This document shows positions 32,902 to 61,782 of a DNA stretch of 64,000 nucleotides, piece after piece. The stretch's first letter is position 1; each line of letters starts with the position of its first letter. The notes under the pieces were generated by a model. That model was not told where the DNA came from. It made no database searches and saw nothing but the letters and a program-made list of their open reading frames with translations. A program made the translations under genes and the position numbers. The DNA lies in the IMG/VR virus record IMGVR_UViG_3300025121_000011, positions 124,001 to 188,000 of that record; one strand, 5' to 3'.

Positions 32902-35900
32902 TGGCTTTAAGACCTACTGCATTTTCAATTCCATCAACCACTCAACTTAAAATTACTTTTAGTGATAACTTATCTGAACAGTTATCAAAAGAGAATTTTG
33001 AAGTTGAATCATTAAATGCAGCAATTAGTAATTTAATTATTATAAGTATTGAAATTACTAAGAATATAGTTCTTTTGACTACCAGACCTCATGTATCTGG
33101 TAACTATTATCTTTTAAAACTATTAGATACTACGGATGTAATTTTCTCTTCTGAAAAGGGTTCTAGATTATTAGATAGTCCTATATCTCGTGAGTTATTT
33201 TTTGTCGGAATTGATACAGTTAATCCCATCAGAGATAGAATGTTACAAAACATTCCCAGTTTATTTGATGTTGATAATACTACTTTGAGAAACATTATTT
33301 CAGCTCAAGCAGATGAAATGCTTCGGGCTCAAGTTGCGATTGGCCGAAATCTAAGTAATAATTATATTAGCATACCCGTTGAAGATGAAATTCGCGTTCG
33401 TGGACCTGGAGCAACAGATAGACTTGCCAATGAAAATGCATATGAAATCACAAGAGTATCTGATAATCTATCTACATCATTATCTAAATACGATAAATTA
33501 GAATATACTAGTGACAATTCTTACACGCTGTTACAGTCCATACCATTTTTCCCAATTTCTTTACAGCAAGTTTTGGTTGAGGATGAAGAAATATCATCTA
33601 ACTCTGTTGGTAATGATTTTAACGGATTTCTATTAAGTCTATCCAAATCAAATGTGATTCGAGTTTTATCTATTACTCATATTAGAAATGGTGAAACAGA
33701 AGATTGTAATGGAAACTTAGGTACAGATTATGATTTAAATATTTATAAATATTCATTGACTAATAATAAATATGACCAACTTAATGCATACTCTTTTGCT
33801 CAATTATATAGCAATCAAGTTCTTTTGTCTGAATTTAGTAATATTTCACGTCCATCTTCCTTAGATACGATTAAAATAACTTATCTATATAAAAATTTAG
33901 GAAGAGCAATAATAGAGAATTCTGTTAGTGTTTCAAAAATAATTTCCAAGATTAATGAATCTGTCCCATCCAATGCGGTGAAATTTTTCTTAGATCACGC
34001 TCCAATAGTAGATAGTGATAATGAAATCTATAGCTCCAAGGGTGGAGTAATATTTCATATTAATGAAAACTCTATAGATACACCAAATGAATTTGCTGTA
34101 GAACTTTTATTTGGTACCTCCAGGATGCCAAAATATATTGGAGAATATACTATAAATTATGAAACTGGTGAAGTTTTTGTAATTGGAACAAAAATCGGGG
34201 AAGGTACTGGATATAATAATTATGTAATGGATTATAATTATAGAAAAGAATTTACACAAGATGTTGACTTTTCTATTAGCGATCAAGATGTTGTTGCCCA
34301 TCCTAATCGAAATCTGATTGGAGCAGAAGCTGAAATAACATTTAGTTATGATAAAGTCTATGCATCTGGGTCTGATTATGCTCCTTTGTCTCATATAGAA
34401 GTTATTAATGAACAGGTCAAAAATAAACTTTCTGGTTCATTTAGCATAACAACCCAACATGCTCCAATTACAGATATTTTTAGAATATATAATCAAACTA
34501 CTGGAGAGGTATATAATCCCTTATATCATTCAGATACAGAAGTGTTTTTTTCAGGAAATAAATCTCCAGAAATTGTAGAAATAAATTCAGAAAATGCTAA
34601 ATTTAATCGTATTACAAATGAAGAGTTATCAGTAATTGGCAAATTAATTTCTCCGGCTTTTAATATCAGAATTACTTCAAATCCTTCTACAAATTTTATT
34701 GCATTTGAACCAGGAATCCCAGCTGAATTAATATCAATTAATTCAGATAATTATTTTGTTAGGACGACTAGTTCTGTAGAGGGAATAATAAGTACAGAAG
34801 ATATACAAATTAGATTTTTTGGAACGCCTGATGTTAATAATTTAATTAATTCTTTTGCCATAAGTCTTACCGCTACATTACCATCTGTAAATTCTGAAGC
34901 TATCATTGGTATTAGCACATATCAGATTTATTTAGATAATGAAGGTATAATTAATAAAAATTTAGATTCTATAGGAAATCTGGTTAATACCTCTCTTTCT
35001 TTTTCGGATGCCACTTTGTTTTTAGTAGAAAAGTATTTTACTCCAATTAATTCTGTTTCTGGAATTGATGACACTTCAGATGGAGGAATTAGTAAAGCAC
35101 TTACATCTTTAAAGACTACAGATTTTTACTCTAACTTATCTAGATTACGTAAGGTTGGGGACTATACTGTTGATTATGAAAATGGAATAATATACTTAGC
35201 TGTAGATAAAGATCAGGATATCTATTTAGGATCAGCGTCTTATTATTGTTATAATATCAAAGCACATAATGGAAATGTTTATTATGCTTCGGGTGCTGTT
35301 AAGAAAGTAAACAGTCCGGATTCTATAGAAGAAGCTAGTTTAATTTATAACGATTTACATAATGATGATGAATTTATTAAAATTCTCGATCTAGAGTCTT
35401 CTATTTCTATATGGGATGGTGTAACTGAAGCTGGTGATTTAAATGGTAATTTTCAAATTACATTAGAAGTTCTTTCGGATTACAGTGTTGTTGTTCCATA
35501 TGATATATTAACCATTTTATCTATTAATCAAGTTATTGATTTAACTGGTATTAACCTAGATGATAGTGATATCAACAATAGGATAGCAGAATCTACTCGC
35601 TCAAGTTTATTAACAACTATTTCTAATGGTGGTAAAAATTTATATGATCCAATTCGAATGAGTTTTTCAAAAAATGTTATTGATTTGAAAACATCTAAAG
35701 AACGCAGAGTTTATGCTGATAATACTGGTGATTTTACAGTTACGATTTACGATAACGCTGTGGATTCAATTTATAAAGTAACAAATGTTACCACAGAAAT
35801 TGATCTTTTTGATCATAAGTTAAATATTATTAAACTATCTGATGTTGAAATTTTAAATACAATTCAAAGTAGTCCTACGACAGGTACTGTGTATATATCA

Positions 35901-38900
35901 ATAAGTGATATCAGCAAAATCGACACTAATTCAGATTTCTTATTAGATGCATCTGGTAACAGATTTTCTATTTTAGCAATAGACTCTATTCTCTCTACGT
36001 TAACCGTTGAGAGTCCCGCTATTAACAATATTACAGCGATGCTCCCAGACTTAGATGTATCTGGTGATTATACAACTATAGTTGTAAAACCAACTATAAC
36101 TATCACTGATTCTTATTTAAAAATAGTTATACCATCAGATGCTCCAATATCTTCTGGTACCTTATTTAGAATAACATATTTAACTAATCTAATTCCAAGT
36201 GTTGGAACTGCTTTAGCAATTGATTATAGATATGGAACAATTTATATAGACTATACTTATATTAAAGATTATCTAACAGTATCTTATGAATATGGTGATA
36301 ATACCTTAGACTGGAGTATTAACGATTCAATTTCCGAAGGTGATGTATATTATGTTTCTTATAACTATGGTGCGGGTAGAGAGGCTTTGCAAGCCAATTT
36401 TGGAAGTTTAACAAATATTCCATTCTTTGAGAATTTTCCTTTATCTGTTGATCGAGAACTTTATAGAAGTGCTATTTCTGGCATTTTACAAACTTTCCCA
36501 AAAGGGCCTACAATTCCGGCTTTTAAAAGTTTGGTAAAATCCTTCACAGATATGAATCCAAATATTGATGAATTAACTTTTGGCAGGTGGATTTTAGGTA
36601 GAGATTACCTACATGTAACTAAACCAGAATTTACGGGATCTTTAGAGTTTAGAGATGGTAGGTTTGATGATGGATTATTATTCCAACCAGACACTACAGT
36701 GAATATACCTACAATATCTAGCTTATCATTACAAGAAGGAACTCTTGAGGGATGGGTCCGTCCTTCTTGGTCTGGCATTGATAATGATGCAGATATTACT
36801 TTTGAAATAGATAACATTGGAGACCAAAAATACTTTATAGATGCTAAAGATAAGTATAAAGATAATGATTGGAAAATAATTAATATAAATAATATAGGCG
36901 GATTAGATGAAACAGGGCTAGGTTCTAGATTGTTTAATTATAATTCAGATGCAAGCGCTGCCAATGGAATATCAATAGGCCCATTTTTATTATCTAAAGA
37001 GATATCACATTATAATGTAGCAACAGATTCGACACAAAAGATAAGAATTAAAGCCACACAAGCATCTGTTAGAATTTTAGATGATATAACTCCTATCACA
37101 TTGGCTCCGGTGTATTCTGTCGCAACCTTTGGTATGCTAGATGGAATTAAATATATAGGAGCAGAACTTACTTTAAAAGAAGTCTTTACAAATATTTCAT
37201 TTGCTACAGGATCTTATATTGCATCAATAGATGATTTACCAGATTATGACAGGATGCATTATCTACGCTCCTGTTCTTGTTCGGTTACGAATAATATTTC
37301 TAAATTAGAAGGATTTAACTCAACATTATTAAAAATTGACCTAAATACTAGTATTAATTTATCTACATCATTAAATCAATTTGCTATAGTAAATAACTCA
37401 ATTTCTACTTTTGTGGTGATAGATAGCGTTGGAAACTGTTGGCAAGTTAAGGCTCTAGAAGATCCTTCTGGTCAGCTTTATATGAGCACTTTGATGCCAA
37501 CTGTTTTGAAGACTATATATCTTGAAAGGTTTCCTCTAAATAGACAACACGTTAGTCAAGATGGTGTAGATGCTATAAACGCTTTGGAGCCTTCCGGTAC
37601 TTTTAACCTGTATATTAAATCCGTAACAGCCTCAGCTTATAATATTGTTAATTCAATAAGTGCTTTTAACTATTTACAATTTTTTGCAATTGATTGGAGT
37701 AATTATATAGATATTACTATAATCAAGTCTTTATCCGAAAATCTAGTTTCAATCCAAGTTGGTAAACAAACTCAATCTTTGTTTTATAGTGATTTAGCTT
37801 CAACAACTGATGTATCTCTTTTTGGTTCTACACATTATCCTAATGGTGCAATTTTTGGATGTGCTCAATCAGATGTTTATACACAAGTCCAATCATATAA
37901 AAATAGAATTACTGTACATAATAGATATAGTTTAAGCGACATTCACATTGGACATGACGGATATAATCCAATTAGTATGCCATTTACTATTAATCGAGAA
38001 GATTCACCTAATTATGCAATTGGATTGCCTCCAACAATCGATACAGAGGATGGAATCTTTATCGGATATGATGAATTATGCAAATCACCTTTATCAGATC
38101 AGACTGGGCAATGGGTATTTCGAACCAGATCTACCAGAGGCATAAGCATTCCAGAGAGCGTAACTTTTATTGGAAATACTTATACCAGTAATTATACTGT
38201 TTATGAAATAGATCATATATTCTCTGGTGTTATTACTACTGATGGTGCTTTTTCCTCTGTGGTTAGAGCCTCTAGAGATGATATTGGTGGATGCTTAAAT
38301 AGTCCAGAATGTAGTGCATCTTTTAGATATTGTGGCGGAGAATTGCTAGAAGCTTCGGGTTGGGTTAATTTAGAAGAAACAGGCTCAACTCTAATAAATA
38401 CCATTCTGACTGGCGCTGGTACCTTCTATGAACCATGGAGTAAAATCGGAAACTTTAGTACCACAGAGAGCGATGGCATTTATAGAATGATTTCCGGCTC
38501 AGAAGATGAATGTCGAGATGAAGTAGGCAATTATTTATTTACTAAATTACCATGTGGCAATAATATAGAATATATCACTTCTGTAAGAGTTATAGATATT
38601 GATCTTGGTGTTATAACTTATGGAGTTGGTGAATTTTTTGGAGCAGTTTCCGGTAATTTAGTAGGCATAACTCCACTACATATTTCTTTTTCTTATGCAG
38701 ATATTAAAATTACATTAGCGCTTACCAATAGTCTAGAACCTTTAATAGTCTTATATGATAACTATGACAATAATATCATAAACTATGTCTCATTTAATTG
38801 GAATGACAATCTATATCATGAATATAAGATTATTATTTTAGAATCTACTCAAATATTAAGATTATATGTCGATAATCTTCTTTTATCACAAATATCATTA

Positions 38901-41900
38901 GCTGAATTTATAACTCCCATTATCAATACAGAATCTTATTTAGCCATTCATGTTTTAGACGGAGGGGTGGTTTCTGTAGATGATTTTATATCTAATGGAT
39001 TAAGTAATACTATTGATGTTGATTTAATTGAATACACTGGATCAAGTTATAATGGAAATATTCAATTAGAAGATACTGATATCTTTATACATACTGAATC
39101 TAAAATAGAATTTGAATTTCATATAGATCAATTAGATGGCTATGATGCATACGACGCATATGATGCTTATGACGGATATATTACTCCTGTAGTTGGAATT
39201 GATGAAATATTGGTTTCTGCTGATCGAGCCAAATATTTTATAGATTCGGCTTTGGATGATAATTTTGGGCGAATATCTGTTTTCAATGATGGAAAAGGAT
39301 TTCTAAATTTTAGAATATATGACGAATCCTTATCATTAGGAAAAGAAGTTGGTATGTATAATTTAGCTACCAATATTAAAGATTGGATTGCTGGAGAATC
39401 ACATCATATCGCAATAAGTTGGAAACTCAACTCTATTGATGATAAAGATGAAATGCATTTATTTATTGATGGTATAGAATCACCAAATATTTATAAGTTT
39501 GGTGGAGTTATTCCTCTAAAAGTTAATGCAAAGTTTTCTGATGTTAGCCAAGAATCTTTACATAGTTTTTTAACACATGATGTTGATTTTTGCAATACTT
39601 ATACAAATGGAATTATAAACGCCGGTTCTGCAAGTTTTTCATCTGTAGATTTAATCTTTACCGATGAAATGATTGGCCGAAGCATTCTATTTACTGGTGG
39701 AACAAATATTTCTAGTTTATTAAATAAAGAATATATTATAAAAAGTGTTACAAGTGGTGTTGTTACCTTTGGTAGGGGAAGCGGTTTAGAGACAATTATT
39801 TTTTCTGCATCTGCTTCGGATATAGAATTCAAATTTCCACCTACCGCTGGTATTAATTCTTCAATACTTACAGATCTTAGAAACTCTAAGTTTACTATTT
39901 ATCGAACATTATCAGATGGTTCAATCCAGGAGCTAGGCGGAATATTATATGAGGTCAACGGCGGTATAATAGATATTATTAGTGGTTCTAATATCGAAGA
40001 TCCAAAGTATCGAGCCAATCTTTCTACAAGATTAATAGAATTTATTGGCCTCAATTCTAATTGTGATACAATTGCTACTGTATTAATGAGTGATGTTGAT
40101 ATTCATATAGAAACTATGGGATTAAATCTTCAAAGATATAGAGATGTTGTAGACTTGTCCGCATCTTCTTATATAACGGATGATTCTCCATACGATGGAA
40201 CCAGTATTTTAAAACTTTATAATATTGAACCATTATCCCTATCTGATGTAGAGATAAGAAGAATAATTCTAGATAGAATGGTAATAGATATTGGAGATAT
40301 TCAATCAAGAGTAGATGGAAATTATTTAGCATCCTTTAGTATAACTTTAGATACTACTAGCAATAAGGTGTCTTCTGCGGCTGGACGCATAAATAAACAG
40401 AATTTAGGTAGAGTTGTTAAATTGTGGTTTGAATCTGATAACGTAGTATTTTGCGAAACAGATGGTTATGATGGTTATGCGATGGAAAACGCAATTACTA
40501 TTTATGGAATTACGACTGATGGTACAGATGAAGAAACTTTCAGTATTTATAAAAATGGTTATTTTAGTGGTACAAAATTTTTTACTACCATATCTAAAAT
40601 AGATGGCGCAATGATAATCGCAGATCCCAATTATTTTGAATTGGGGGTAGTTTCTATAAAAGAAGATGATTTAATTACAGTTTCTAATAATAATGGTGAT
40701 TATGCCGAAATTATAAGTTATCAAAATGGTACACTTACATTAAGTACCGCAGGATCAAATAATAGTTTTCCATTTGAATTACACAAAGGAAGATATGAGG
40801 TTGAATATCCATCTTATTTACATATATCAGTTCCAGATTTAGGTAAAAAACTTTATATTGGTTCTAATTATAATGGAGAAAAAAGTTGGAATGGTGTAAT
40901 AGATGAGTTTAGAATTATTTCAGAGATGTCTAATGACACTAGAACTTATGAAAGTGAAACGTCAGGTACACGCAGTATTACTAGAGACTATCATAGTAGT
41001 AATGCTTTTTGCACAGATTCTCAAACTTTAGCCTTAATTCATTTTGACAATCCAATAGATAAACAAAACCGTCGTCTAAGAAATAAAGAATTTTTAGATG
41101 AATATAACAATATTAAATTTAAACTCTCAGTTGCACAAAGAGAAGAGTTGTTAGCTTTAATTAGTGATAGTGCTAATTTTATATCTGCTATGATCAAAAT
41201 GGGATTTAACCAGGACCAAGCAGAATCCACATATTATGAAACTTTATATGCAGAAAATGGTCCTATTATAAATGAGGCTGAATATTATAACAATTTTAAT
41301 GAAACACAGATTAGTTATGAAAGTGTAAATGATACTTTTGGAAAGTCTGGTTATTTTAGATCTGATTCTGGATTGTTATATAATAATGATCTTGGATATT
41401 TTAGAGCACAAGAGGGAACAATTGAGTTTTGGACTAGTCCGGTCTTAGATACAAAAGTAGATACAGAGCGCAGATATTATGTTGATATTGCAGATATTAA
41501 ACGCGAACGTATTATGTCTAAATCTTCAAATATAATCGAACTTAATAATGCAGCAAGTGAAATACTTAGTGTAAAATTATTAACATCTGCTGCAAGATTC
41601 GAAAGTTATTATACAGACTCTGAATTAGATACAATTTTATTTGATGAAGTTTCCAGAAATAAAATAAGTGGATTATTATCTGGTGGATCTAGTGTTGATA
41701 AGGATTTTATGACGGGCGGGAAGTTATCTGCCAATGGGTTAACCATCACTCTCGCGCAAGCTTTACCAGGAGTCAATATTGATATGATTGTTACTTATAT
41801 TCCAATAGATTCTTCTGGGGATAGAGTATCAGTTTTTAAAGATGAATATAGTCAAATTGTTTTTAGCATCACTGCTGATGGAGTTGATAATGTTGTTACA

Positions 41901-42536
41901 TCGGATGTCAATTGGAAGAAAAATACTTGGCATCGGATAATGTGTGTTTATAAAACTAATACAAAATCTGCTGATACTATGAAAATTTTTGTAGATGGAC
42001 AAGAAGGAGATGTAATTAGATATGGTACTGGAATGGTCTATGGTACTGGATATATATATGGACAATTTATTCAAGATACAGGACAGGCTGCTTCTAAGGA
42101 TTATAGAATTAACTTAGGAACTGAATTTAGAGTAATCTCTATTGGTTCAGATATTTATGGAGATCATAGCGCTAGATCTAGAATTGATAACTTACGTTTT
42201 AGTAATATTATGAGAAATACAACTAGAGACTCATTGGGTCATTTCATAGATACTAATTATTCAAGTAATACTGATACCATTTATCCAGTAATAGAAGATG
42301 ATGCAACAACATTTATTTTAGATTTTGATGCAGATGGTGAAATAGTTGATAAATTTGCTACTGTTATTGACCCTAAATATGGTATATTTGATTTTAATAT
42401 AGATGTTATAGACAATTTTAATAAAGTAATTGGTATAAATGACGGTGAAATAGAGGATCTAATCACAGAATTGGTTAATAGGTTAAAACCTGCACATTCT
42501 AATGCTCTTGTAAAGTTTACTAAGAGTAAGTGCTAG
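32901..42536 (+). CDS. Giant (3211 aa) baseplate wedge / receptor-binding protein: gpI-like motifs plus Ig-like and LamG domains
   Basis: N-terminal Ig-like domain (QLKITFSDNL...LLTT); DRELYRSAI...KGPTIPAF (from 36450) and terminal LKPAH (42483-42497) are gpI/gp48-type motifs; LamG motifs EGTLEGWVRP, HHIAISW...LFIDG, YIGS...GVIDEFRI, EGTIEFW, TWHRIMCVY, RIDNLRFS. Confidence 0.65.
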   Translation: MALRPTAFSIPSTTQLKITFSDNLSEQLSKENFEVESLNAAISNLIIISIEITKNIVLLTTRPHVSGNYYLLKLLDTTDVIFSSEKGSRLLDSPISRELFFVGIDTVNPIRDRMLQNIPSLFDVDNTTLRNIISAQADEMLRAQVAIGRNLSNNYISIPVEDEIRVRGPGATDRLANENAYEITRVSDNLSTSLSKYDKLEYTSDNSYTLLQSIPFFPISLQQVLVEDEEISSNSVGNDFNGFLLSLSKSNVIRVLSITHIRNGETEDCNGNLGTDYDLNIYKYSLTNNKYDQLNAYSFAQLYSNQVLLSEFSNISRPSSLDTIKITYLYKNLGRAIIENSVSVSKIISKINESVPSNAVKFFLDHAPIVDSDNEIYSSKGGVIFHINENSIDTPNEFAVELLFGTSRMPKYIGEYTINYETGEVFVIGTKIGEGTGYNNYVMDYNYRKEFTQDVDFSISDQDVVAHPNRNLIGAEAEITFSYDKVYASGSDYAPLSHIEVINEQVKNKLSGSFSITTQHAPITDIFRIYNQTTGEVYNPLYHSDTEVFFSGNKSPEIVEINSENAKFNRITNEELSVIGKLISPAFNIRITSNPSTNFIAFEPGIPAELISINSDNYFVRTTSSVEGIISTEDIQIRFFGTPDVNNLINSFAISLTATLPSVNSEAIIGISTYQIYLDNEGIINKNLDSIGNLVNTSLSFSDATLFLVEKYFTPINSVSGIDDTSDGGISKALTSLKTTDFYSNLSRLRKVGDYTVDYENGIIYLAVDKDQDIYLGSASYYCYNIKAHNGNVYYASGAVKKVNSPDSIEEASLIYNDLHNDDEFIKILDLESSISIWDGVTEAGDLNGNFQITLEVLSDYSVVVPYDILTILSINQVIDLTGINLDDSDINNRIAESTRSSLLTTISNGGKNLYDPIRMSFSKNVIDLKTSKERRVYADNTGDFTVTIYDNAVDSIYKVTNVTTEIDLFDHKLNIIKLSDVEILNTIQSSPTTGTVYISISDISKIDTNSDFLLDASGNRFSILAIDSILSTLTVESPAINNITAMLPDLDVSGDYTTIVVKPTITITDSYLKIVIPSDAPISSGTLFRITYLTNLIPSVGTALAIDYRYGTIYIDYTYIKDYLTVSYEYGDNTLDWSINDSISEGDVYYVSYNYGAGREALQANFGSLTNIPFFENFPLSVDRELYRSAISGILQTFPKGPTIPAFKSLVKSFTDMNPNIDELTFGRWILGRDYLHVTKPEFTGSLEFRDGRFDDGLLFQPDTTVNIPTISSLSLQEGTLEGWVRPSWSGIDNDADITFEIDNIGDQKYFIDAKDKYKDNDWKIININNIGGLDETGLGSRLFNYNSDASAANGISIGPFLLSKEISHYNVATDSTQKIRIKATQASVRILDDITPITLAPVYSVATFGMLDGIKYIGAELTLKEVFTNISFATGSYIASIDDLPDYDRMHYLRSCSCSVTNNISKLEGFNSTLLKIDLNTSINLSTSLNQFAIVNNSISTFVVIDSVGNCWQVKALEDPSGQLYMSTLMPTVLKTIYLERFPLNRQHVSQDGVDAINALEPSGTFNLYIKSVTASAYNIVNSISAFNYLQFFAIDWSNYIDITIIKSLSENLVSIQVGKQTQSLFYSDLASTTDVSLFGSTHYPNGAIFGCAQSDVYTQVQSYKNRITVHNRYSLSDIHIGHDGYNPISMPFTINREDSPNYAIGLPPTIDTEDGIFIGYDELCKSPLSDQTGQWVFRTRSTRGISIPESVTFIGNTYTSNYTVYEIDHIFSGVITTDGAFSSVVRASRDDIGGCLNSPECSASFRYCGGELLEASGWVNLEETGSTLINTILTGAGTFYEPWSKIGNFSTTESDGIYRMISGSEDECRDEVGNYLFTKLPCGNNIEYITSVRVIDIDLGVITYGVGEFFGAVSGNLVGITPLHISFSYADIKITLALTNSLEPLIVLYDNYDNNIINYVSFNWNDNLYHEYKIIILESTQILRLYVDNLLLSQISLAEFITPIINTESYLAIHVLDGGVVSVDDFISNGLSNTIDVDLIEYTGSSYNGNIQLEDTDIFIHTESKIEFEFHIDQLDGYDAYDAYDAYDGYITPVVGIDEILVSADRAKYFIDSALDDNFGRISVFNDGKGFLNFRIYDESLSLGKEVGMYNLATNIKDWIAGESHHIAISWKLNSIDDKDEMHLFIDGIESPNIYKFGGVIPLKVNAKFSDVSQESLHSFLTHDVDFCNTYTNGIINAGSASFSSVDLIFTDEMIGRSILFTGGTNISSLLNKEYIIKSVTSGVVTFGRGSGLETIIFSASASDIEFKFPPTAGINSSILTDLRNSKFTIYRTLSDGSIQELGGILYEVNGGIIDIISGSNIEDPKYRANLSTRLIEFIGLNSNCDTIATVLMSDVDIHIETMGLNLQRYRDVVDLSASSYITDDSPYDGTSILKLYNIEPLSLSDVEIRRIILDRMVIDIGDIQSRVDGNYLASFSITLDTTSNKVSSAAGRINKQNLGRVVKLWFESDNVVFCETDGYDGYAMENAITIYGITTDGTDEETFSIYKNGYFSGTKFFTTISKIDGAMIIADPNYFELGVVSIKEDDLITVSNNNGDYAEIISYQNGTLTLSTAGSNNSFPFELHKGRYEVEYPSYLHISVPDLGKKLYIGSNYNGEKSWNGVIDEFRIISEMSNDTRTYESETSGTRSITRDYHSSNAFCTDSQTLALIHFDNPIDKQNRRLRNKEFLDEYNNIKFKLSVAQREELLALISDSANFISAMIKMGFNQDQAESTYYETLYAENGPIINEAEYYNNFNETQISYESVNDTFGKSGYFRSDSGLLYNNDLGYFRAQEGTIEFWTSPVLDTKVDTERRYYVDIADIKRERIMSKSSNIIELNNAASEILSVKLLTSAARFESYYTDSELDTILFDEVSRNKISGLLSGGSSVDKDFMTGGKLSANGLTITLAQALPGVNIDMIVTYIPIDSSGDRVSVFKDEYSQIVFSITADGVDNVVTSDVNWKKNTWHRIMCVYKTNTKSADTMKIFVDGQEGDVIRYGTGMVYGTGYIYGQFIQDTGQAASKDYRINLGTEFRVISIGSDIYGDHSARSRIDNLRFSNIMRNTTRDSLGHFIDTNYSSNTDTIYPVIEDDATTFILDFDADGEIVDKFATVIDPKYGIFDFNIDVIDNFNKVIGINDGEIEDLITELVNRLKPAHSNALVKFTKSKC

Positions 42537-42598: not shown

Positions 42599-45500
42599 AT
42601 GGCTAGCAAAGACCGACAAATCCCAGCACGAATAAATTTCTATGATGGGCAAAAGGTTACCGAATCAGATATGGATACAGAACAGATCCACAAAACATCT
42701 GTTATATCTAATATGATTTTGGATTTTCATGGAAGTGGGGTTGTTGATGATAATCCATTTGAAGATACGATTCTTTTTGATACAAGGTTTCCTGGAACAC
42801 ATGTTATAGACTCTTCTGATGAAAACGCATCTAAAGAGGATATTGAAAACGGAAGTTATGATGGTAAGGCTATATATTTGGATAGACAACCCACTGATAC
42901 AATTCGTGGAAATAGACTTGTTTTAGAATTGGTTGACTCATCTGTATTGGGCCGCAAAACAGCGAAAGTTCTTATTATAGGTAGAGCATTTGATGGAGTT
43001 AATGAAGTTGGTGAATTAGTTGTAGAATTAATTGAATTTAAAAATAATGAAGAAAAATTAACGAGTTATTATTATCGTCAAATAATCGCCATATTGTTTA
43101 ATAATTTTTCGGGAGGAGTTGGGAAAACTGAAACTGAAACTTCTGCTATAAGCGAAGATTTAATTACAGATACAGGTGGATATTTAACGGTTAAAGAAGC
43201 AGAACCTCTTAAGGTTTATTCTAATCCATACATGTCATATCAAATTGAATCACCAAATATTGGATTACGAAATTTTATAACATCTGATATTAATAATTCT
43301 ATTTCTGATGAAATCACAGAAGCTTTAGGTTCTGCCATCAGCATTACCGATATGTATATCGAATTAGATGGACAAGGATCTATTTCTTTCTCTGCCAATG
43401 CAGACTCAACAATAAGCTATGGACAAAAGTTCTTATCATACTCTAATAATATTCAAAGAATAGATTTGCTTTTAGCAGTAATAGAAGATACTTCCGTACC
43501 AGCAGAACAAAAATTTGATTGGTCTGGTGATTTAGTAATTTCTATTCACGAATTATCATCAGAACCAAAGTGTTCTACTGACGCCATTCCTGATGATCTA
43601 ATTAATTTTGATCCAGAATTATCTCCAATAGTAGAGATGTCTTTTAGTCAAGCTGACTTTGAGGGTTTGGGATTTGTATTAAATGATACATCACAGTTAA
43701 TAAGCTTTAATTTTGCCGGAACATTAATAGCAGATCCGCAGATTTCACCATCTGTACAAACAAATAAGTATTATGCATTTTTAATAAGTCGACGAGGAGA
43801 TAACAGAACCGGAACTATTCTTTTAGAAAAGGGTTTTGATAAGGTTACTAAAAAAAATCTAGATGGTGTTCCTTTAACGACTATAGAGGAGTTTTCTAAA
43901 CAACAAAGCAAATTCACAGAATTCGATCCCAATACACAAAGATATATAGATGATTCTAGTAGCTCATTATGGTACATTGTTCATTCTGATGATGTTGAAG
44001 TTGTAAACGGAACAGCTTATTCTGATGATGGATTTGCAATTACATTAGAGAAAACAGAAGATTTTATTGGGAATTCAGAAATTTCTAAATTTGAAAGACA
44101 TATTTCTTTGGCAAATATTTCTTCTGATGCCAAAAATTATGTTGTTCTATCGCATAGTGAAAAATTTACTACACCCAGGGCTCATCCTAGGACTGGAAAT
44201 AGAACTTTTACCAGAATAGAAGATACCGGACTAATTTCTATAGTAGATGCCACAGGTTTAACAGATCTGTTAGAGAACAGTACTCCGCTATTGCTTGCTA
44301 AAGTGATAGATCAAAATGTAAGAGATGCTCAAAGCATTACTGGTGAAGCAGATAAACCAGGCATTATTTTACCAGACCGAGTAATAATAATTGATCCATC
44401 TACAGAGTTATCTACTTCTAATTTGATTGGTAGAATTTTTATCCCAGATACCAATTGTCAATGTACAGCTAGATATAGAATTGGTAAAGTAGAATGTAAT
44501 ATCATTAAAACTGGAGACCTTAATGATGATGGAGACATTACTAATGCTGATTTATCTTTGTTATTAAATATTGTTGGAAATACAATCAACTCTGAAGCAA
44601 CAGAACGCAAGATTTTAAGTGGAGAGTTAGATTTACAAGATTTCCTATTATCAGATCTCGATTCTAACGATACAGTTGACGGATTTGATATAGAGCTTAT
44701 GGAAGATGCCATTGATGGATATATCAACTTTACCACAGCAGAAGAAATTAAGTTTTTAACGCTTAGATTAGAAAATATTCTAGAGGATAGTGATTCTCCT
44801 ATCATCTTTACCGATATATTGGGAAGTGGTATAACTACTGCTAATTCTAGTACCTTATTATTCGAAGCATCTTCGGAACAAAAAGCACTTATTATTAGGT
44901 CTGGTGACACAGTTGAGATTGAGCAATCTTCATTAGATGCTGGTGTTTATACCATAGCAACAAAGAGTATTGCTTCCGATAATCTAACTGTTACCGTTAC
45001 CGTACTGGATAGTACTGGTACAGCTCCAATATTTATTGGAGATCTTGGATTTAATGTAACAATTGTAAGTGGTACAGAAGTAAATACATATGTAGATAAT
45101 AACTCATTAGTTAATGTCCCATTTACATCTACTAGTTATTCTATTGATTTTGTTGAATATCCATACGATGAAGTTTTCTTAAATATTTGTGATTTAAGAA
45201 GATTCGTAGGTGTTAGTTTTATTGAGCAAGCAACAAATACTTGTATTTGTGAAGAAACGGATTGTTTAAGTACGCCAAGCTGCGAACCAATATATAAAAA
45301 TCAAACTTTTATTCCTGGTGATTTATATGTAACGGGAGATATACTTTCTGATACAAATACTCCATATCATGGAGATTTCGAATTTGCTAAAATTCAGATT
45401 CCTTTACCTCCAGGCAGCATCACTGATTGTGCTATAAATTTATATACAAATTTTATTAAAGCTGATGATCTTAGTAGTTGCAAAACAGCCTCTGGCTATC

Positions 45501-47146
45501 CAGCTATGAAATATTCTGATGGTACTTATGTTGGTTGTGATGATAATGGAGCTGATACAGACTTAACTAAAGGTCGAGTTAAAATTTCACAAGCTATAGG
45601 TAGCCTGTATGTAGATTCTTTAATTGATGGTTATGCAACAGATGGCTATGCTGATGCTACGGCTTCATCATCTTCAGAAGAATTAGTAACCGAAAACTTT
45701 ATAGATCATAGTTATACATCTTTCTCAACCTGGATTGAAGATCCTTTTAATAATGTTATAATTACTACATTATCTCATCCATCTGGAACAAATCAACCTG
45801 CTACTTTTCAGTTAACTACAGCACTAGATGCTAGTTTGAGATTTGGAAGATTAAACACACCAGCAGTAGCTGATGATTTTGAAGATGATTTCGTTGTAGA
45901 TTGGACAGCATCCAGAACAACTTGGCCCAGCGCAAGCTTAACTTCTGGTGTAATATCTTCATTTATGACACTAACCGTTGATAACGTAGATGGTTCTAGT
46001 GCGGAATACAAATTAGGTTGGATGGCTCAAGTATCTGGTACCGTTCTTTTCTTTTCCGGAACAACAACCAACAGTTTAAGTGTTGTTACATCTTCATTCT
46101 CTCATCAAGTTTCTGCACCAGATAGCTTAGGGGATGATGTTTTGTTTAGATTCCGCAGAATTAATGATGTTATTACCGCACATTATTTAGTTCCAGGTGC
46201 AATATCAGAGCTAGAAACCCCATTTGGTCAATATGTTAGAATTGGTACTAATCCAACCATTCAAGCAGGAAGTGGGCCGGCGTCTATTAGCTTTGAAATA
46301 AATCAAAATAGCTTACCAAATGTTGGGCTTGCCTTCTTTACATCATTAAGTGAAGTAGTAATTAAGTCTTCATATTTATCTAATGATAGTCCCACCAGTG
46401 TAACTATTGGAAGAGATGCACTAACATCTATTATAGATCGTGTAGCATATACTTTTCCTATTAACTTAACTAGTAGAACAAATATAGTTTCTGCTAATCT
46501 AATTCTAACTTCTGCTTCAAACGCTACAATTACAGATACATTTAATGTGATTCCACTAGATATTTTAAATGCAGATAATTTAGGTAAATATTATGATTAT
46601 CCATTATCTCAAAACAACTCACTAATAGCGTCCTTTGCACCTGGTACAATAGTAAGCGGCGGGTCAATCACCATCGATGTAACTAATGCGGTCATTTCTA
46701 TGATGGCAGAAGCCGGACATTTACCTGGTTTTATAAAAGGATTTGTAATTGAACCAGATTTAACCGCAGATTCTGAATTTTTAATCAATACTGCTGCAAC
46801 ACTTGAAATTGGATATGAAGATATTACAACGGGTGTTATTTTCAAGGTTGGCATATCTATAGATCCCACTACTGGAATAGCAACCTTTAATACTAGAAAC
46901 ATTCTATATGATGCCATTCTAGAAGAATCCAGAACCGTTATCAACTTCGGCGTTTATTTAAAGAAAGCCGGATTTATCAATAATGATTTATATATTTCTA
47001 TTGCAGATATAAAAAGAATCGGTCTCGGTACATGTGCAGATGAAAGTGTACTAGCAGATGATGATGAATGTTGGTTTATCGCGGGATCTACTGCAACTGG
47101 GACATTTGTAGGCGGAAGCTTCCCCTGCCAATACCACCTGCCATAA
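42599..47146 (+). CDS. 1515-aa tail/baseplate-attached adhesin-like protein with dockerin-like and DNRLRE-like domains
   Basis: AGGAG SD; N-terminal RINFYDGQKVTESDMDTEQ resembles baseplate-attachment N-termini; paired Ca loops GDLNDDGDITNAD and SDLDSNDTVDGFD; C-terminal IVSANLIL...ITIDVTNAV...GFVI. Confidence 0.55.
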   Translation: MASKDRQIPARINFYDGQKVTESDMDTEQIHKTSVISNMILDFHGSGVVDDNPFEDTILFDTRFPGTHVIDSSDENASKEDIENGSYDGKAIYLDRQPTDTIRGNRLVLELVDSSVLGRKTAKVLIIGRAFDGVNEVGELVVELIEFKNNEEKLTSYYYRQIIAILFNNFSGGVGKTETETSAISEDLITDTGGYLTVKEAEPLKVYSNPYMSYQIESPNIGLRNFITSDINNSISDEITEALGSAISITDMYIELDGQGSISFSANADSTISYGQKFLSYSNNIQRIDLLLAVIEDTSVPAEQKFDWSGDLVISIHELSSEPKCSTDAIPDDLINFDPELSPIVEMSFSQADFEGLGFVLNDTSQLISFNFAGTLIADPQISPSVQTNKYYAFLISRRGDNRTGTILLEKGFDKVTKKNLDGVPLTTIEEFSKQQSKFTEFDPNTQRYIDDSSSSLWYIVHSDDVEVVNGTAYSDDGFAITLEKTEDFIGNSEISKFERHISLANISSDAKNYVVLSHSEKFTTPRAHPRTGNRTFTRIEDTGLISIVDATGLTDLLENSTPLLLAKVIDQNVRDAQSITGEADKPGIILPDRVIIIDPSTELSTSNLIGRIFIPDTNCQCTARYRIGKVECNIIKTGDLNDDGDITNADLSLLLNIVGNTINSEATERKILSGELDLQDFLLSDLDSNDTVDGFDIELMEDAIDGYINFTTAEEIKFLTLRLENILEDSDSPIIFTDILGSGITTANSSTLLFEASSEQKALIIRSGDTVEIEQSSLDAGVYTIATKSIASDNLTVTVTVLDSTGTAPIFIGDLGFNVTIVSGTEVNTYVDNNSLVNVPFTSTSYSIDFVEYPYDEVFLNICDLRRFVGVSFIEQATNTCICEETDCLSTPSCEPIYKNQTFIPGDLYVTGDILSDTNTPYHGDFEFAKIQIPLPPGSITDCAINLYTNFIKADDLSSCKTASGYPAMKYSDGTYVGCDDNGADTDLTKGRVKISQAIGSLYVDSLIDGYATDGYADATASSSSEELVTENFIDHSYTSFSTWIEDPFNNVIITTLSHPSGTNQPATFQLTTALDASLRFGRLNTPAVADDFEDDFVVDWTASRTTWPSASLTSGVISSFMTLTVDNVDGSSAEYKLGWMAQVSGTVLFFSGTTTNSLSVVTSSFSHQVSAPDSLGDDVLFRFRRINDVITAHYLVPGAISELETPFGQYVRIGTNPTIQAGSGPASISFEINQNSLPNVGLAFFTSLSEVVIKSSYLSNDSPTSVTIGRDALTSIIDRVAYTFPINLTSRTNIVSANLILTSASNATITDTFNVIPLDILNADNLGKYYDYPLSQNNSLIASFAPGTIVSGGSITIDVTNAVISMMAEAGHLPGFIKGFVIEPDLTADSEFLINTAATLEIGYEDITTGVIFKVGISIDPTTGIATFNTRNILYDAILEESRTVINFGVYLKKAGFINNDLYISIADIKRIGLGTCADESVLADDDECWFIAGSTATGTFVGGSFPCQYHLP

Positions 47147-47573: not shown

Positions 47574-48680
47574 GTGTCAAATATATTAAAAATCAGAAGC
47601 AGAGGCATAATGGGAACCCATCACAGTTGGGCTGTAGTGATGAGATCTCTATTTGCAGTGTGGATTTCTCAGGGACATGATAGTTATATCACAACCACAA
47701 ATTCATATGATGGATTTCCTGAGGAATGGCGTAAGTTTTGTGATCGCGAATATCATCGTCCGGATTTAGATATTTGTTACACTTTGCCTAGAAATTTTAA
47801 TGCGAGATTCATGAAGAAGTCGCGTAATAAAATGGCAATTTATAATTATGAAACAAGTTTACTACCAAAGGAGTGGGTGAAGGATGTTTCTCATATTGAT
47901 TTTTTGTTGCCATCTAGTGAATTTTCAAAATGGGTATTTACTAATAGTGGAATTAGTTCTGATAAATGTGTTGTGATTCCGCATGGAATAAATCAAAGAG
48001 ATTTTTTAGATAAATCTACCATTACATTAGGCAATAATAAAACTTTTAGATTTTTAAATATTTCGATTCCTCATTATAGGAAGAATATAAATGTTTTATT
48101 AGAAGCATATTACGCTGCTTTTGATGCATCGGATGATGTGTGTTTGGTTTTAAAAACAGATTTAAATCCGCCAAAGGATCGAAAAAGATTTTTATTTGAA
48201 GCGGATATAGCAGAACAAATACAGCATATCCAAGTGTATTATAATAAAATTGGTAAGAGTTTGCCTCAAGTGGAGATAGTACAGCAAAGTTTGCCAAGTA
48301 TGATTCCTCTTTATAATTCATGTAATTGTCTTGTTAGCGCATCTTCTTCTGAGGGATTTGGATTACCATTATTAGAAGGTCTTGCTGCACATATGTTGGT
48401 TGTTTCTCCGCGTTGCACAGGACAATTAGATTTTTTAAATGATCAAAATTCTATATTATATAATGTAAAAGAAGTGATAGCTCCTCCACATTATCAATAT
48501 TGGAGGCCAACAGATGGTGCTACAACCTTTATGCCGCATAAAGATGATTTAGCCGAGGCTATGTTAAGTGCTTATAATAATTATCAAGTGCTACAAGAAT
48601 CATTTGAAGCTGGTCGACAAGAGGTTCTTAAACAATTTACATGGGAAAGTGCCGCTAATAAGATTTTGGAATTATTATGA
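47574..48680 (+). CDS. Glycosyltransferase, GT-B fold (GT4-like)
   Basis: GTG start; VIPHGIN, HYRKNINVLLEAY, YNSCNCLVSASSSEGFGLPLLEG, FTWESAA. Confidence 0.9.
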   Translation: MSNILKIRSRGIMGTHHSWAVVMRSLFAVWISQGHDSYITTTNSYDGFPEEWRKFCDREYHRPDLDICYTLPRNFNARFMKKSRNKMAIYNYETSLLPKEWVKDVSHIDFLLPSSEFSKWVFTNSGISSDKCVVIPHGINQRDFLDKSTITLGNNKTFRFLNISIPHYRKNINVLLEAYYAAFDASDDVCLVLKTDLNPPKDRKRFLFEADIAEQIQHIQVYYNKIGKSLPQVEIVQQSLPSMIPLYNSCNCLVSASSSEGFGLPLLEGLAAHMLVVSPRCTGQLDFLNDQNSILYNVKEVIAPPHYQYWRPTDGATTFMPHKDDLAEAMLSAYNNYQVLQESFEAGRQEVLKQFTWESAANKILELL

Positions 48681-53745: not shown

Positions 53746-53749
53746 TCTA

Positions 53750-56630: not shown

Positions 56631-56632
56631 AT

Positions 56633-57955: not shown

Positions 57956-57963
57956 GAATGTAA

Positions 57964-58740: not shown

Positions 58741-58750
58741 AGGGGCCGTT

Positions 58751-61061: not shown

Positions 61062-61074
61062 AGAAGAGGAATGC

Positions 61075-61782
61075 ATGAATCAAGACGATATTAAAGAGAT
61101 TTTCAATAAGCGTTCTAATAAGTTAAAAGATCATGATCCGTGGAGATATGGAGAGAGTCTATCATTAAAGACGGATCTTATCGAGATAGAATGGATTAGA
61201 AATAACTGTAAGTATAAGAAAGCCTTATTAGATATTGGTTGTGGAACAGGGCGGCATGTTATTGAATTATCAGGAGATTTTGATGAGATTTTGGCCGCAG
61301 ATTTTGCTCAAGGAAATATAAATGTTTTAAATACAAAAATAGCTGAGATGAATATCTGCAATATACAAACCGTAGTTTCTTCAGCTCAGGACATCACTTT
61401 GCAAGCCGAAAGAAGAAAATTTGACATCATTATCGGAATAGGGCTTGTCCAATATTTAAATAATGATGAGTTTTTTAGTTTCTTCGAAGATTGTCACAGT
61501 CTTTTAAATAATCATGGCAGACTTTTGTTAAAAATTCCAATGTCAGAGACAGAAACATTTTCTTTTGATGGATATTCTGAATTACTAGAAAGTGAATATT
61601 TCTCTTTTTATAGAAATATAAATGATATTTTCAAAGGATTCTATAAATGGTTTAGCTTATATAAACTCGAAAGGGTTTTTACATTGGAAAATTTGGGTAA
61701 AGAATTATGGATAATAGAAAATCACGATAACTCTAAGCAGATATGGTTTTTGCTGGTCAAAAAAGAAACGGAGGAATTATGA
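61075..61782 (+). CDS. Class I SAM-dependent methyltransferase
   Basis: LLDIGCGTGRH, ADFAQGNI, FDIIIGIGLVQYL, LLNNHGRLLL. Confidence 0.9.
   Translation: MNQDDIKEIFNKRSNKLKDHDPWRYGESLSLKTDLIEIEWIRNNCKYKKALLDIGCGTGRHVIELSGDFDEILAADFAQGNINVLNTKIAEMNICNIQTVVSSAQDITLQAERRKFDIIIGIGLVQYLNNDEFFSFFEDCHSLLNNHGRLLLKIPMSETETFSFDGYSELLESEYFSFYRNINDIFKGFYKWFSLYKLERVFTLENLGKELWIIENHDNSKQIWFLLVKKETEEL

What the first reader, a model, noticed from the sequence alone, without database searches (positions are those of the whole stretch)
39135..39179. Tandem D-[G/A]-Y motifs recur in three different tail proteins: candidate modification sequon
Seen: DGY-DAY-DAY-DAY-DGY at 39135-39179 and DGYDGY at 40461-40478 (3211-aa protein), DGYTDGY at 3286-3306 (1203-aa), DGYATDGY at 45626-45649 (1515-aa), plus single DGY at 1405, 7001 (sheath), 37956 and 44714. 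The five-copy array uses different codons in each unit (gat ggc tat / gat gca tac / gac gca tat / gat gct tat / gac gga tat), which argues for selection on the peptide rather than DNA slippage. The motifs appear to sit in inter-domain linkers. Established: acidic-context tyrosines are sulfated by sulfotransferases (e.g. Xanthomonas RaxST on RaxX), and Tyr O-glycosylation occurs on some S-layer proteins. Inference: these could be the acceptor sites for the adjacent sulfotransferase/GT operon, or a shared binding or Ca-binding tag.
Basis: partly seen in the sequence, partly recalled or inferred. Interest (0 to 1): 0.72.

Follow-up and report, generated by a model that had tools for sequence, protein, structure and literature searches.

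The report
Conserved Asp-Gly-Tyr repeats in tail proteins
Three unrelated baseplate/tail proteins of an uncultured 335-kb groundwater phage carry short tandem Asp-(Gly/Ala)-Tyr units in exposed loops; these are kept by selection across a whole lineage of huge phages and may be attachment points for sugars, but that function is unproven.

Summary
Every reported D-[G/A]-Y array sits at the stated coordinates. Tandem arrays occur four times where shuffling predicts 0.01, and in the 335-kb genome only in these three virion proteins. The single DGY/DAY sites are at chance level.

Homologues show selection on the peptide:
- In about 65 full-length relatives of the 3211-aa protein (34-65% identity), nearly all keep DGY at the same alignment site, and most carry arrays at that site and a second one; 13 shorter relatives (26-42%) also carry arrays. 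Copy number is 1-10 and spacing 0-1 residue.
- The 1515-aa family keeps DGYxxDGY; its second unit is invariant.
- Tyr in arrays is never Phe or Trp (300/0/0), against 198/83/24 for isolated D[GA][YFW].
- Most arrays use mixed codons.
- AlphaFold places both sites of the 3211-aa protein in low-confidence loops.

The sulfotransferase link fails: three near-complete relatives with arrays lack that enzyme. A soluble glycosyltransferase island follows the tail genes in every relative examined, so it cannot discriminate. One clade reduced to single units has also lost the catalytic part of one glycosyltransferase, which is one evolutionary event.

Best reading (about 0.35): a lineage-specific, Tyr-dependent short motif read by a phage factor, most plausibly a Tyr O-glycosylation site. 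No modification has been shown.

The parts
39135..39179 (+). Site 1 array, five D-[G/A]-Y units (aa 2079-2093 of the 3211-aa protein)
   Evidence: Nearly all of the ~65 full-length homologues keep DGY at this alignment site, with 1-10 units. It lies in a pLDDT<50 segment of the AlphaFold model.
40461..40478 (+). Site 2 array, DGYDGY (aa 2521-2526 of the 3211-aa protein)
   Evidence: It is a loop between two strands of a confident beta-sandwich (block pLDDT 54, flanks above 90). Homologues have either 1-4 units here or a tight two-residue turn. Two homologues insert a ~250-aa domain right after the units.
3286..3306 (+). DGYTDGY (aa 883-889 of the 1203-aa protein)
   Evidence: It is conserved only in the closer clade (>=48% identity) and lies in an indel-prone loop between conserved blocks.
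45626..45649 (+). DGYATDGY (aa 1010-1017 of the 1515-aa protein)
   Evidence: DGYxxDGY is present in 86 of 120 homologues. The second unit is invariant in 31 diverse sequences. A variable Ser/Thr/Glu-rich stretch follows.
32901..42536 (+). 3211-aa virion protein directly after the baseplate-J gene; carries sites 1 and 2 and a C-terminal Laminin_G_3 domain
   Evidence: 81 homologues of 2200-4700 aa were found on contigs up to 420 kb.
42599..47146 (+). 1515-aa putative tail-fibre protein; has a dockerin-like Ca-binding segment around aa 640-710
   Evidence: The dockerin hit in homologue P0187 is at aa 637-701.
640..4251 (+). 1203-aa protein upstream of the sheath gene; counted as a virion protein by position only
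29587..32901 (+). Baseplate wedge protein (Baseplate_J / gp6-like); context that places the 3211-aa gene in the baseplate/fibre module
47574..48680 (+). GT4-type glycosyltransferase; first gene of the island, present in every relative examined
48677..50212 (+). 511-aa glycosyltransferase: N-terminal CBM4_9-like beta-sandwich, disordered linker, then a GT-B (GT4) fold
   Evidence: The array-poor clade keeps only a ~250-aa ORF matching aa 1-140.
50212..52240 (+). Two further core glycosyltransferases (371 and 306 aa)
   Evidence: The 306-aa one is missing in the array-poor clade.
52240..63770 (+). Variable part of the glycan island: GT-methyltransferase fusion, three GTs, sulfatase-family protein, sulfotransferase, nucleotidyltransferase, DUF711, methyltransferase, UDP-glucose dehydrogenase-like, GSCFA
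   Evidence: None has a TM-like segment. The island continues beyond the window.
57964..58740 (+). Sulfotransferase-like protein (Sulfotransfer_1, 23.6 bits); not conserved among relatives that carry arrays

Best explanation
The D-[G/A]-Y units form a lineage-specific short linear motif displayed one to ten times on flexible, surface-exposed loops of baseplate and fibre proteins. New units arise by slippage of a 9-nt unit. They are then kept by purifying selection on Asp and, above all, on the Tyr hydroxyl.

The reading I think most likely is that each unit is an acceptor site recognised by a phage-encoded soluble enzyme of the glycosyltransferase island that follows the tail genes, giving Tyr-O-linked glycans on the tail periphery. 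In this phage the glycan may be further methylated or sulfated.

Shown: the arrays, their conservation, their exposure, the Tyr invariance and the syntenic soluble GT island. Inferred: that any enzyme reads the motif, that the modification is glycosylation, and that Tyr is the modified atom.
For: 1. Tandem clusters number 4 against 0.01 expected. They occur only in three virion proteins of the 335-kb genome, and only in the same orthologues in three near-complete relatives.
2. The three carrier proteins share no detectable similarity, so the motif arose independently in each.
3. Positional conservation reaches down to about 34% identity in the aligned full-length 3211-aa homologues, with variable copy number and spacing (0, 1 or 2 residues); shorter relatives at 26-42% identity also carry arrays. 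Variable spacing suits independent recognition units and does not suit a periodic fold.
4. Tyr is never Phe or Trp in arrays (300/0/0). Isolated D[GA][YFW] tripeptides in the same proteins are 198/83/24, and ordinary Tyr columns hold 15-19% Phe. Asp outnumbers Glu 178 to 8, and only Gly, Ala and rarely Ser occur in the middle.
5. 46 of 60 arrays and 83 of 111 neighbouring unit pairs differ in codons, so units persist long enough to collect silent changes.
6. Both sites of the 3211-aa protein are low-confidence loops beside confident beta-strands.
7. The same unit is kept in phages from groundwater and marine samples. That argues for a phage-intrinsic reader rather than a host-specific receptor contact.
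8. A GT island directly follows the 1515-aa gene in every relative with enough sequence. All 16 of its ORFs in this window lack TM-like segments, and no lipid-carrier initiating transferase, flippase or polymerase was found.
9. The clade reduced to single units has lost the catalytic part of the 511-aa GT and the 306-aa GT.
10. Virion glycosylation by phage GT genes is documented in mycobacteriophages (Freeman et al. 2023, as cited in PMC12619734). O-glycosylation of Tyr exists in bacterial S-layers (PMC2943079).
Against: - No modification has been observed.
- The GT island is present in every relative examined, so co-occurrence cannot discriminate.
- The co-loss of arrays and GTs is one evolutionary event, perhaps two (sign test p = 1).
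- Two array-poor loci (L070, L071) still keep DGYAxDGY in the 1515-aa homologue without the 511-aa GT.
- A single DGY persists at site 1 in the array-poor clade, so the last unit may simply be part of the fold.
- The 511-aa GT carries a carbohydrate-binding-module-like domain and a generic GT4 fold. That suits a glycan-extending enzyme as well as a protein-directed one.
- Peripheral GT4 enzymes that act on lipid-linked sugars also lack TM helices, so the island could instead remodel host surface glycans.
- No GT4 enzyme is known to glycosylate Tyr (own knowledge).
- DGY 9-nt microsatellites also arise sporadically in unrelated cellular genomes.
Confidence: 0.35

Rival explanations
1. The arrays are unmodified functional loops. 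DGY would be a docking tag for a conserved phage partner (an assembly factor or another baseplate protein), or a generic cation- or polysaccharide-contacting 'Velcro' that needs the Tyr hydroxyl and the Asp carboxylate. No covalent modification is involved.
For: Most of the evidence under the best explanation fits equally: exposure, Tyr/Asp selection, restriction to baseplate/fibre proteins, and variable copy number giving avidity. The 1515-aa protein also has a dockerin-like Ca-binding segment, so cation binding is already a theme in it. A single DGY is kept at site 1 even where the GTs were lost.
Against: - Calcium sites usually accept Glu and Asn and do not need Tyr, yet here Asp outnumbers Glu 178 to 8 and Tyr is invariant.
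- Sugar-stacking sites favour Trp, which never occurs in arrays.
- A host-receptor contact should diversify, yet the same tripeptide is kept in phages from different habitats.
- No candidate partner was identified.
Confidence: 0.3
2. The arrays are neutral or nearly neutral low-complexity linkers. A structurally conserved seed DGY at a loop edge is copied by replication slippage, and the copies are merely tolerated as a flexible spacer.
For: One relative has arrays with identical codons in 6 and 5 units, which indicates recent slippage. 28 of 111 neighbouring unit pairs are identical. The sites are indel-prone and also accept unrelated inserts. The same 9-nt repeat arises sporadically in unrelated cellular genomes. 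The last unit of site 1 is nearly invariant and could act as the seed.
Against: - Most units have diverged at silent positions with no replacement of Asp or Tyr, which requires purifying selection.
- Arrays are kept at the same sites in homologues down to about 34% identity.
- The motif arose independently in three unrelated proteins and nowhere else in 300-400-kb genomes.
Confidence: 0.12
3. The array tyrosines would be sulfated by the sulfotransferase at 57964, as RaxST sulfates RaxX.
For: The arrays are acidic, rich in small residues and exposed, like known sulfation sites (own knowledge). The relative with the longest arrays (G010) has a 34%-identical sulfotransferase.
Against: - The enzyme is absent from three relatives that are at least 94% complete and keep arrays.
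- It is absent from most partial relatives as well.
- No PF13469 (the TPST/RaxST family) is present in the four genomes tested, including this one.
- The match to Sulfotransfer_1 is weak (23.6 bits) and sits inside a sugar-modifying island, which suggests sugar sulfation.
- Known sites usually have the acidic residue directly before Tyr, whereas here Gly or Ala is at -1 (own knowledge).
Confidence: 0.04
4. The arrays form a periodic structural element, namely a collagen-like or polyglycine-II-type helix with a small residue at every third position that bundles between subunits of a fibre.
For: With zero spacing the small residue recurs every third position. Collagen-like Gly-X-Y runs of variable length are common in phage fibres (own knowledge).
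Against: - About half of the unit junctions in the 3211-aa family carry a one-residue spacer.
- The 1515-aa family uses two-residue spacers and the 1203-aa family one, which breaks any fixed three-residue register.
- Ala replaces Gly in 3 of the 5 units in this phage.
- Most arrays have only 2-3 units.
- AlphaFold gives no ordered structure here.
Confidence: 0.03

Closest known systems
Virion glycosylation of mycobacteriophages (Che8, Corndog, Myrna; Freeman et al. 2023, known to me through its citation in PMC12619734 and from memory)
   Same: Phage-encoded glycosyltransferase genes lie next to the structural genes, and the modification is thought to happen in the cytoplasm on virion proteins.
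   Different: There the glycans are on the C-termini of the capsid and tail-tube subunits and were shown by mass spectrometry. Here the candidate sites are internal Tyr-containing loops of baseplate/fibre proteins, the island is far larger (at least 9 GTs plus sugar-nucleotide enzymes), and nothing has been measured.
Glycosylation of short acidic repeats by GT4 enzymes: Ser-Asp repeats of staphylococcal Sdr/Clf proteins by SdgA/SdgB, and serine-rich repeat adhesins by GtfA/GtfB (own knowledge)
   Same: A very short acidic repeat in an exposed linker has variable copy number and is modified in the cytoplasm by soluble GT4-family enzymes encoded beside the substrate gene.
   Different: The acceptor there is Ser and the enzymes carry a DUF1975 acceptor-binding insert. 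Here the only hydroxyl residue of the unit is Tyr, and the one GT with an extra domain has a CBM4_9-like module instead. SdgB chains matched the 511-aa GT only through the generic donor-binding domain.
Tyrosine O-glycosylation of bacterial S-layer proteins (Paenibacillus alvei SpaA, Thermoanaerobacter; PMC2943079)
   Same: It shows that beta-Glc or beta-Gal linked to Tyr exists in prokaryotes on surface-array proteins.
   Different: That pathway builds the glycan on a lipid carrier and transfers it outside the cytoplasm with an oligosaccharyltransferase at two to four sites per protein, and no sequon has been defined. The phage island has no membrane protein.
Protein tyrosine sulfation (TPST; Xanthomonas RaxST on RaxX)
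   Same: Acidic, small-residue-rich, exposed Tyr sites, and a sulfotransferase gene in the same genome.
   Different: The sulfotransferase is not of the TPST/RaxST family and is missing from most relatives that keep the arrays. The acidic residue is at -2 and +1 rather than -1.
Short repeated motifs in phage fibres, such as the His-x-His iron-binding repeats of T4 gp37 and collagen-like Gly-X-Y runs (own knowledge)
   Same: A tiny motif is repeated a variable number of times in tail-fibre proteins, and its side chains are under selection.
   Different: Those motifs sit in a fixed register inside an ordered trimeric fold. The DGY units have variable spacing and lie in loops predicted to be disordered.

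Membership tests
Tyrosine-sulfation substrate and enzyme pair (TPST/RaxST type) | A TPST/RaxST-family sulfotransferase (Pfam PF13469) is encoded with the substrate | tested here: not met
   PF13469 has no match in this genome or in three near-complete relatives. The 57964 protein scores 14.8 bits against a cut-off of 27, and 23.6 bits on PF00685.
Tyrosine-sulfation substrate and enzyme pair (TPST/RaxST type) | The enzyme co-occurs with the substrate motif across relatives | tested here: not met
   It is absent from G001, G002 and G003 (94-100% complete, arrays present). It is present only in G010 and L072.
Tyrosine-sulfation substrate and enzyme pair (TPST/RaxST type) | Sulfate ester on the Tyr | not testable with these tools
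   This needs mass spectrometry of virions or of recombinant protein.
Phage virion glycosylation system (mycobacteriophage type) | Phage-encoded glycosyltransferases adjacent to the virion structural genes | tested here: met
   The island starts 428 bp after the 1515-aa gene here, and is syntenic in all relatives with downstream sequence.
Phage virion glycosylation system (mycobacteriophage type) | Glycan covalently bound to virion proteins | not testable with these tools
   There is no isolate and there are no proteomic data.
Phage virion glycosylation system (mycobacteriophage type) | Acceptor at the C-terminus of the capsid and tail-tube subunits | tested here: not met
   Arrays are internal and occur only in the 3211-, 1515- and 1203-aa proteins, not in the sheath or tube proteins.
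Repeat-directed GT4 protein glycosylation (SdgB/GtfA type) | A short acidic repeat in an exposed linker, next to GT4 genes | tested here: met
Repeat-directed GT4 protein glycosylation (SdgB/GtfA type) | The GT carries the DUF1975-type acceptor-binding domain | tested here: not met
   No such Pfam match appears in any island GT. The extra domain of the 511-aa GT resembles CBM4_9.
Repeat-directed GT4 protein glycosylation (SdgB/GtfA type) | Ser/Thr acceptor in the repeat | tested here: not met
   The unit holds no Ser or Thr. Spacers are Ser or Thr in only a minority of junctions.
S-layer-type Tyr O-glycosylation | Lipid-carrier pathway: initiating phosphoglycosyltransferase, flippase and O-oligosaccharyltransferase | tested here: not met
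   No TM-like segment occurs in any of the 16 island ORFs, and no such Pfam family was found. Host enzymes could in principle substitute.
Collagen-like or polyglycine-II repeat | An uninterrupted three-residue period with Gly at every third position | tested here: not met
   Spacers of 0, 1 or 2 residues are mixed within and between arrays, and Ala occupies 41 of 300 middle positions.

The most novel reading that the evidence does not exclude
DGY is a previously undescribed Tyr-O-glycosylation sequon read in the cytoplasm by soluble phage glycosyltransferases. On this reading a lineage of huge aquatic phages would decorate the periphery of its baseplate and fibres with phage-made glycans, which in this phage may be methylated or sulfated. 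The number of attachment points would be tuned by slippage of a 9-nt unit.
Probability: 0.25. Interest if true: 0.8.

Novelty: new variant of a known kind. Interest (0 to 1): 0.55.

Why it matters
A three-residue motif that arose independently in three unrelated virion proteins is a strong signature of a trans-acting reader. It occurs nowhere else in 300-400-kb genomes, and its tyrosine is never exchanged for phenylalanine.

- It would define the first glycosylation sequon for tailed-phage virions.
- It would be the first Tyr-directed sequon made by soluble enzymes.
- It would explain why this lineage of huge phages keeps a 15-25-kb sugar island next to its tail genes.

Whatever the function, the motif is a simple, searchable marker for this lineage and for the exposed loops of its giant baseplate proteins.

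Tried and rejected
- Complex prediction of the 511-aa GT with the site-1 loop gave no verdict (score 0.00). This counts neither for nor against binding.
- Foldseek of the 611-residue segment model found only weak multi-domain beta-sandwich matches (TM about 0.1). No fold was assigned.
- Foldseek and PDB sequence searches of the 511-aa GT found only generic retaining GT4 enzymes such as BshA, PimB', HepE, MshA and PglA. This says nothing about the acceptor.
- The PDB search for the sulfotransferase found nothing.
- INPHARED holds no close phage. The best match is 25.6% identity to a sheath fragment.
- Pfam and PHROGs give no family for the 1203-, 1515- or 3211-aa proteins, apart from Laminin_G_3 in the last.
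- BLASTP among the large structural proteins found no shared domain around the motifs.
- A trait test on a tree found one independent pair only, so there is no statistical power.
- Contigs from four runs laid on 38600-40700 showed no variants or indels. They are assembler contigs, so rare variants would not be seen.
- A GT search in other lineages that carry DGY arrays (a 1556-aa family at 28% GC) failed because those records are only 7-10% complete.
- A scan of cellular genomes returned mostly short ORFs or actinobacterial low-complexity stretches, with no informative context.
- A DGYDDGY match elsewhere in G002 lies in a 75-codon frame and is probably not a gene.
- A full-text search for DGYDGY and related strings found no relevant paper.
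- Whether this phage belongs to the 'moraphages' of PMC12619734 was not tested.
Full report
WHAT THE WINDOW IS

The window is bases 124,001-188,000 of a 335,169-bp virus record with direct terminal repeats, at 34% G+C. Independent assemblies of several groundwater and soil metagenome runs hold the studied stretch letter for letter.

The first 47 kb is the tail module of a contractile-tailed phage:
- a sheath of 1072 aa (PHROG 2839)
- a tube-like protein
- a tail tube initiator-like protein
- a gp25-like baseplate protein
- a 1104-aa Baseplate_J protein
- a 3211-aa protein with a C-terminal Laminin_G_3 domain
- a 1515-aa protein

From 47574 to the window's end, and about 10 kb beyond it, lies a sugar island. 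It holds at least nine GT4-type glycosyltransferases, two methyltransferase domains, a sulfatase-family protein and a weak sulfotransferase. It also holds nucleotidyltransferases, dehydratases/epimerases and a UDP-glucose dehydrogenase-like protein. No close relative is in the GenBank phage collection.

Shuffling each protein 1000 times gives these results:
- Structural ORFs hold 17 D[GA]Y units against 5.4 expected.
- There are four multi-unit clusters against 0.01 expected, and no shuffle reached four.
- With each cluster counted once there are 10 sites against 5.4 (fraction 0.04), so the six isolated sites are unremarkable.
- Non-structural ORFs hold one unit against 1.5 expected.

Across the whole genome (367 ORFs, about 102,000 aa) clusters occur only in the 1203-, 3211- and 1515-aa proteins. 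These three proteins share no detectable similarity.

CONSERVATION IN RELATIVES

The 3211-aa protein has 81 homologues (26-65% identity) on contigs up to 420 kb.
- Among the ~65 full-length homologues that were aligned (34-65% identity), DGY sits at two fixed places. Site 1 lies between a conserved 'KIEFEF-NID' block and a 'VDE..SSD' block. Site 2 lies between 'FDSDN..FC' and 'ITIYG.T.DG'.
- Copy number runs from 1 to 10.
- Units are contiguous or separated by one residue (85 and about 93 junctions).
- One distant clade keeps a single unit at site 1. At site 2 it has either a tight two-residue turn or one unit.
- Two homologues insert a roughly 250-aa domain right after the units at site 2. 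Two others insert Cys-rich repeats at site 1. Both sites are therefore exposed and tolerate insertions.
- The 13 shorter relatives (2216-2387 aa, 26-42% identity) were not aligned; 12 of them carry arrays, mostly around aa 1157-1224.

The 1515-aa family has 120 homologues. DGYxxDGY is present in 86 of them and is followed by a variable Ser/Thr/Glu-rich stretch. The second unit is invariant in an alignment of 31 diverse members.

In the 1203-aa family the DGYTDGY pair is present only in the closer clade (at least 48% identity). It lies in an indel-prone loop.

In three near-complete relatives (316-395 kb) a genome-wide pattern search finds arrays only in these orthologues. One further match lies in a 75-codon frame.

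A scan of all IMG/VR contigs for a DGYDGYDGY-coding pattern gave 45 loci. Of about 27 that lie in ORFs of at least 150 aa:
- 14 belong to the 3211-aa family.
- Three belong to one family, of which L040 matches the 1203-aa protein, with the array at a different site.
- Five belong to a separate 1556-aa family.

SELECTION ACTS ON THE PEPTIDE, AND ON TYR IN PARTICULAR

In the 3211-aa family, D[GA][YFW] tripeptides with a neighbouring unit within 7 residues are Tyr 300, Phe 0, Trp 0. Isolated ones in the same proteins are Tyr 198, Phe 83, Trp 24. Ordinary Tyr columns of the alignment hold 15-19% Phe.

After a unit, the first position is Asp 178 times and Glu 8 times. The middle position is Gly 151, Ala 27 and Ser 2.

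At the DNA level, 46 of 60 distinct arrays use more than one 9-mer, and 83 of 111 neighbouring unit pairs differ. Units therefore persist long enough to collect silent changes without losing Asp or Tyr. One relative does have arrays of six and five units with identical codons, so slippage is the source of new units.

The single DGY at 1405 behaves like an ordinary structural position. Nine of 32 homologues have Phe there.

STRUCTURE

An AlphaFold2 model of aa 1990-2600 with a 63-sequence alignment has mean pLDDT 75.
- Site 1 falls in a segment with pLDDT below 50.
- Site 2 falls in a loop with block pLDDT 54, between two strands of a beta-sandwich whose flanks exceed 90.

The motifs are therefore not buried. 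Fold searches did not name the domains.

THE PROPOSED ENZYMES

The sulfotransferase at 57964 scores 23.6 bits on Sulfotransfer_1 and is below threshold on the TPST/RaxST family.
- It has no counterpart in three relatives that are at least 94% complete and keep arrays.
- It was found only in one partial genome and one locus.
- PF13469 is absent from all four genomes tested, including this one.

Sulfation by this enzyme therefore cannot explain why the arrays are kept.

The glycosyltransferase island is different.
- Its first genes directly follow the 1515-aa gene in every relative with downstream sequence. Later genes vary: NeuB and a cytidylyltransferase in one, GT2, DegT and a nucleotidyltransferase in another.
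- None of the 16 island ORFs here has a TM-like segment. No lipid-carrier initiating transferase, flippase or polymerase was seen. This is compatible with a cytoplasmic acceptor but does not prove one, because peripheral GT4 enzymes of lipid-linked pathways also lack TM helices.
- Because the island was found in every relative examined, co-occurrence says nothing.

The only differential signal comes from the clade L009/L066/L070.
- It has no multi-unit arrays in the 3211-aa homologue.
- At the position of the 511-aa GT it has a roughly 250-aa ORF that matches only the first 140 residues. It lacks the 306-aa GT.
- L071 may be a second case, but only 3.8 kb downstream is available.
- On a tree this is one independent pair.
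- L070 and L071 still keep the DGYAxDGY pair in the 1515-aa homologue.

The 511-aa GT models with mean pLDDT 91. It has a CBM4_9-like beta-sandwich, a disordered linker and a generic retaining GT4 fold. A complex prediction with the site-1 loop gave no verdict.

INTERPRETATION

The facts point to a short linear motif read by something the phage itself supplies:
- independent origin in three proteins
- restriction to the tail periphery
- variable spacing, which rules out a fixed-register fold such as a collagen-like helix
- strict need for the Tyr hydroxyl and the Asp carboxylate
- retention in phages from groundwater and marine samples, which presumably have different hosts

I rank an acceptor site for Tyr O-glycosylation by the adjacent soluble GTs first, at about 0.35. 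I rank an unmodified docking or ion/ligand-contact motif a close second, at about 0.30. A tolerated slippage product comes third (about 0.12), because it does not explain the missing replacements. Sulfation (0.04) and a periodic helix (0.03) are largely contradicted.

Known analogues exist for each half of the idea. Phage GT genes beside structural genes glycosylate mycobacteriophage virions (cited in PMC12619734). Short acidic repeats are glycosylated by GT4 enzymes in staphylococci and streptococci (own knowledge). Tyr-linked glycans exist on S-layers (PMC2943079). None of these combines a Tyr acceptor, a soluble pathway and a phage tail, and no paper in the library mentions DGY repeats in this context.

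VERDICT

This is a real, conserved and apparently undescribed sequence feature. Its function is unproven. The sulfotransferase link fails. The glycosyltransferase link remains a reasonable, testable hypothesis.

Noticed in passing
window 47574-63770 and genome 187903-197599 (L086:903-10599): A sugar island of about 25 kb directly follows the tail genes. It holds at least 9 GT4-type transferases, methyltransferases, a sulfatase-family protein, a sulfotransferase and sugar-nucleotide enzymes, and no predicted membrane protein. Its first genes are syntenic in all relatives seen and its later genes vary (NeuB/CMP-transferase, GT2, DegT).
   Followed up: partly
L086:2723-4867 (genome 189723-191867): A 714-aa GDP-mannose 4,6-dehydratase is split into two matched stretches with a LAGLIDADG domain between them, which suggests an intein or homing-endonuclease insertion.
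   Followed up: no
L008:9210-9944 and L008:20432-21292: In the closest relative, small LAGLIDADG-type ORFs sit between the 3211-aa and 1515-aa genes and inside the GT island. They are absent at these places in the window.
   Followed up: no
window 48677-50212: The 511-aa glycosyltransferase has an N-terminal CBM4_9-like beta-sandwich (aa 1-120, TM about 0.8 to CBM-bearing models) joined by a disordered linker to the GT-B fold. The array-poor clade keeps only this N-domain in a ~250-aa ORF.
   Followed up: partly
P0034 and P0036 (homologues of window 32901-42536), site 2: A domain of about 250 aa (Pfam PF14240, YHYH) is inserted right after the DGY units at site 2. P0017 and P0021 carry Cys-rich repeated inserts at site 1. 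Wherever the site-2 loop is extended, a Cys precedes it ('FC..DGY').
   Followed up: no
G010:C1:71333-71386 and 72749-72793 (same record as L075): Arrays of six and five DGY units are built from identical 9-mers (GACGGTTAT, GACGGATAT), which indicates recent slippage expansion. This record also has a 34%-identical sulfotransferase.
   Followed up: partly
window 44500-44730 (aa ~640-710 of the 1515-aa protein): This is a dockerin-like, EF-hand-type Ca-binding segment. Homologue P0187 passes the Dockerin_1 threshold at aa 637-701. The single DGY at 44714 ('DAIDGY') lies at its end and is invariant or nearly so in the family.
   Followed up: partly
window 21111-27287 (aa ~1190-1430): The 2058-aa protein has a cluster of five hydrophobic, TM-like segments. 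It could be a membrane-inserting ejected protein or the true tape measure. The 610-aa ORF at 11285-13117 has only a weak tape-measure PHROG hit.
   Followed up: no
L013, L032, L038, L041, L050: A separate family of 1556-aa proteins on 28% G+C viral contigs carries DGYDGYDGY at one conserved place ('STHDGYDGYDGYVDK'). The records are too incomplete to check for neighbouring GT genes.
   Followed up: partly
whole record: The phage comes from groundwater metagenomes, while homologues of its tail proteins are also recorded in Tara ocean data and in bins labelled Patescibacteria or Pacearchaeota, which are probably mis-binned. It may be related to the aquatic 'moraphages' (PMC12619734), which also have four core GT orthogroups. 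This was not tested.
   Followed up: no
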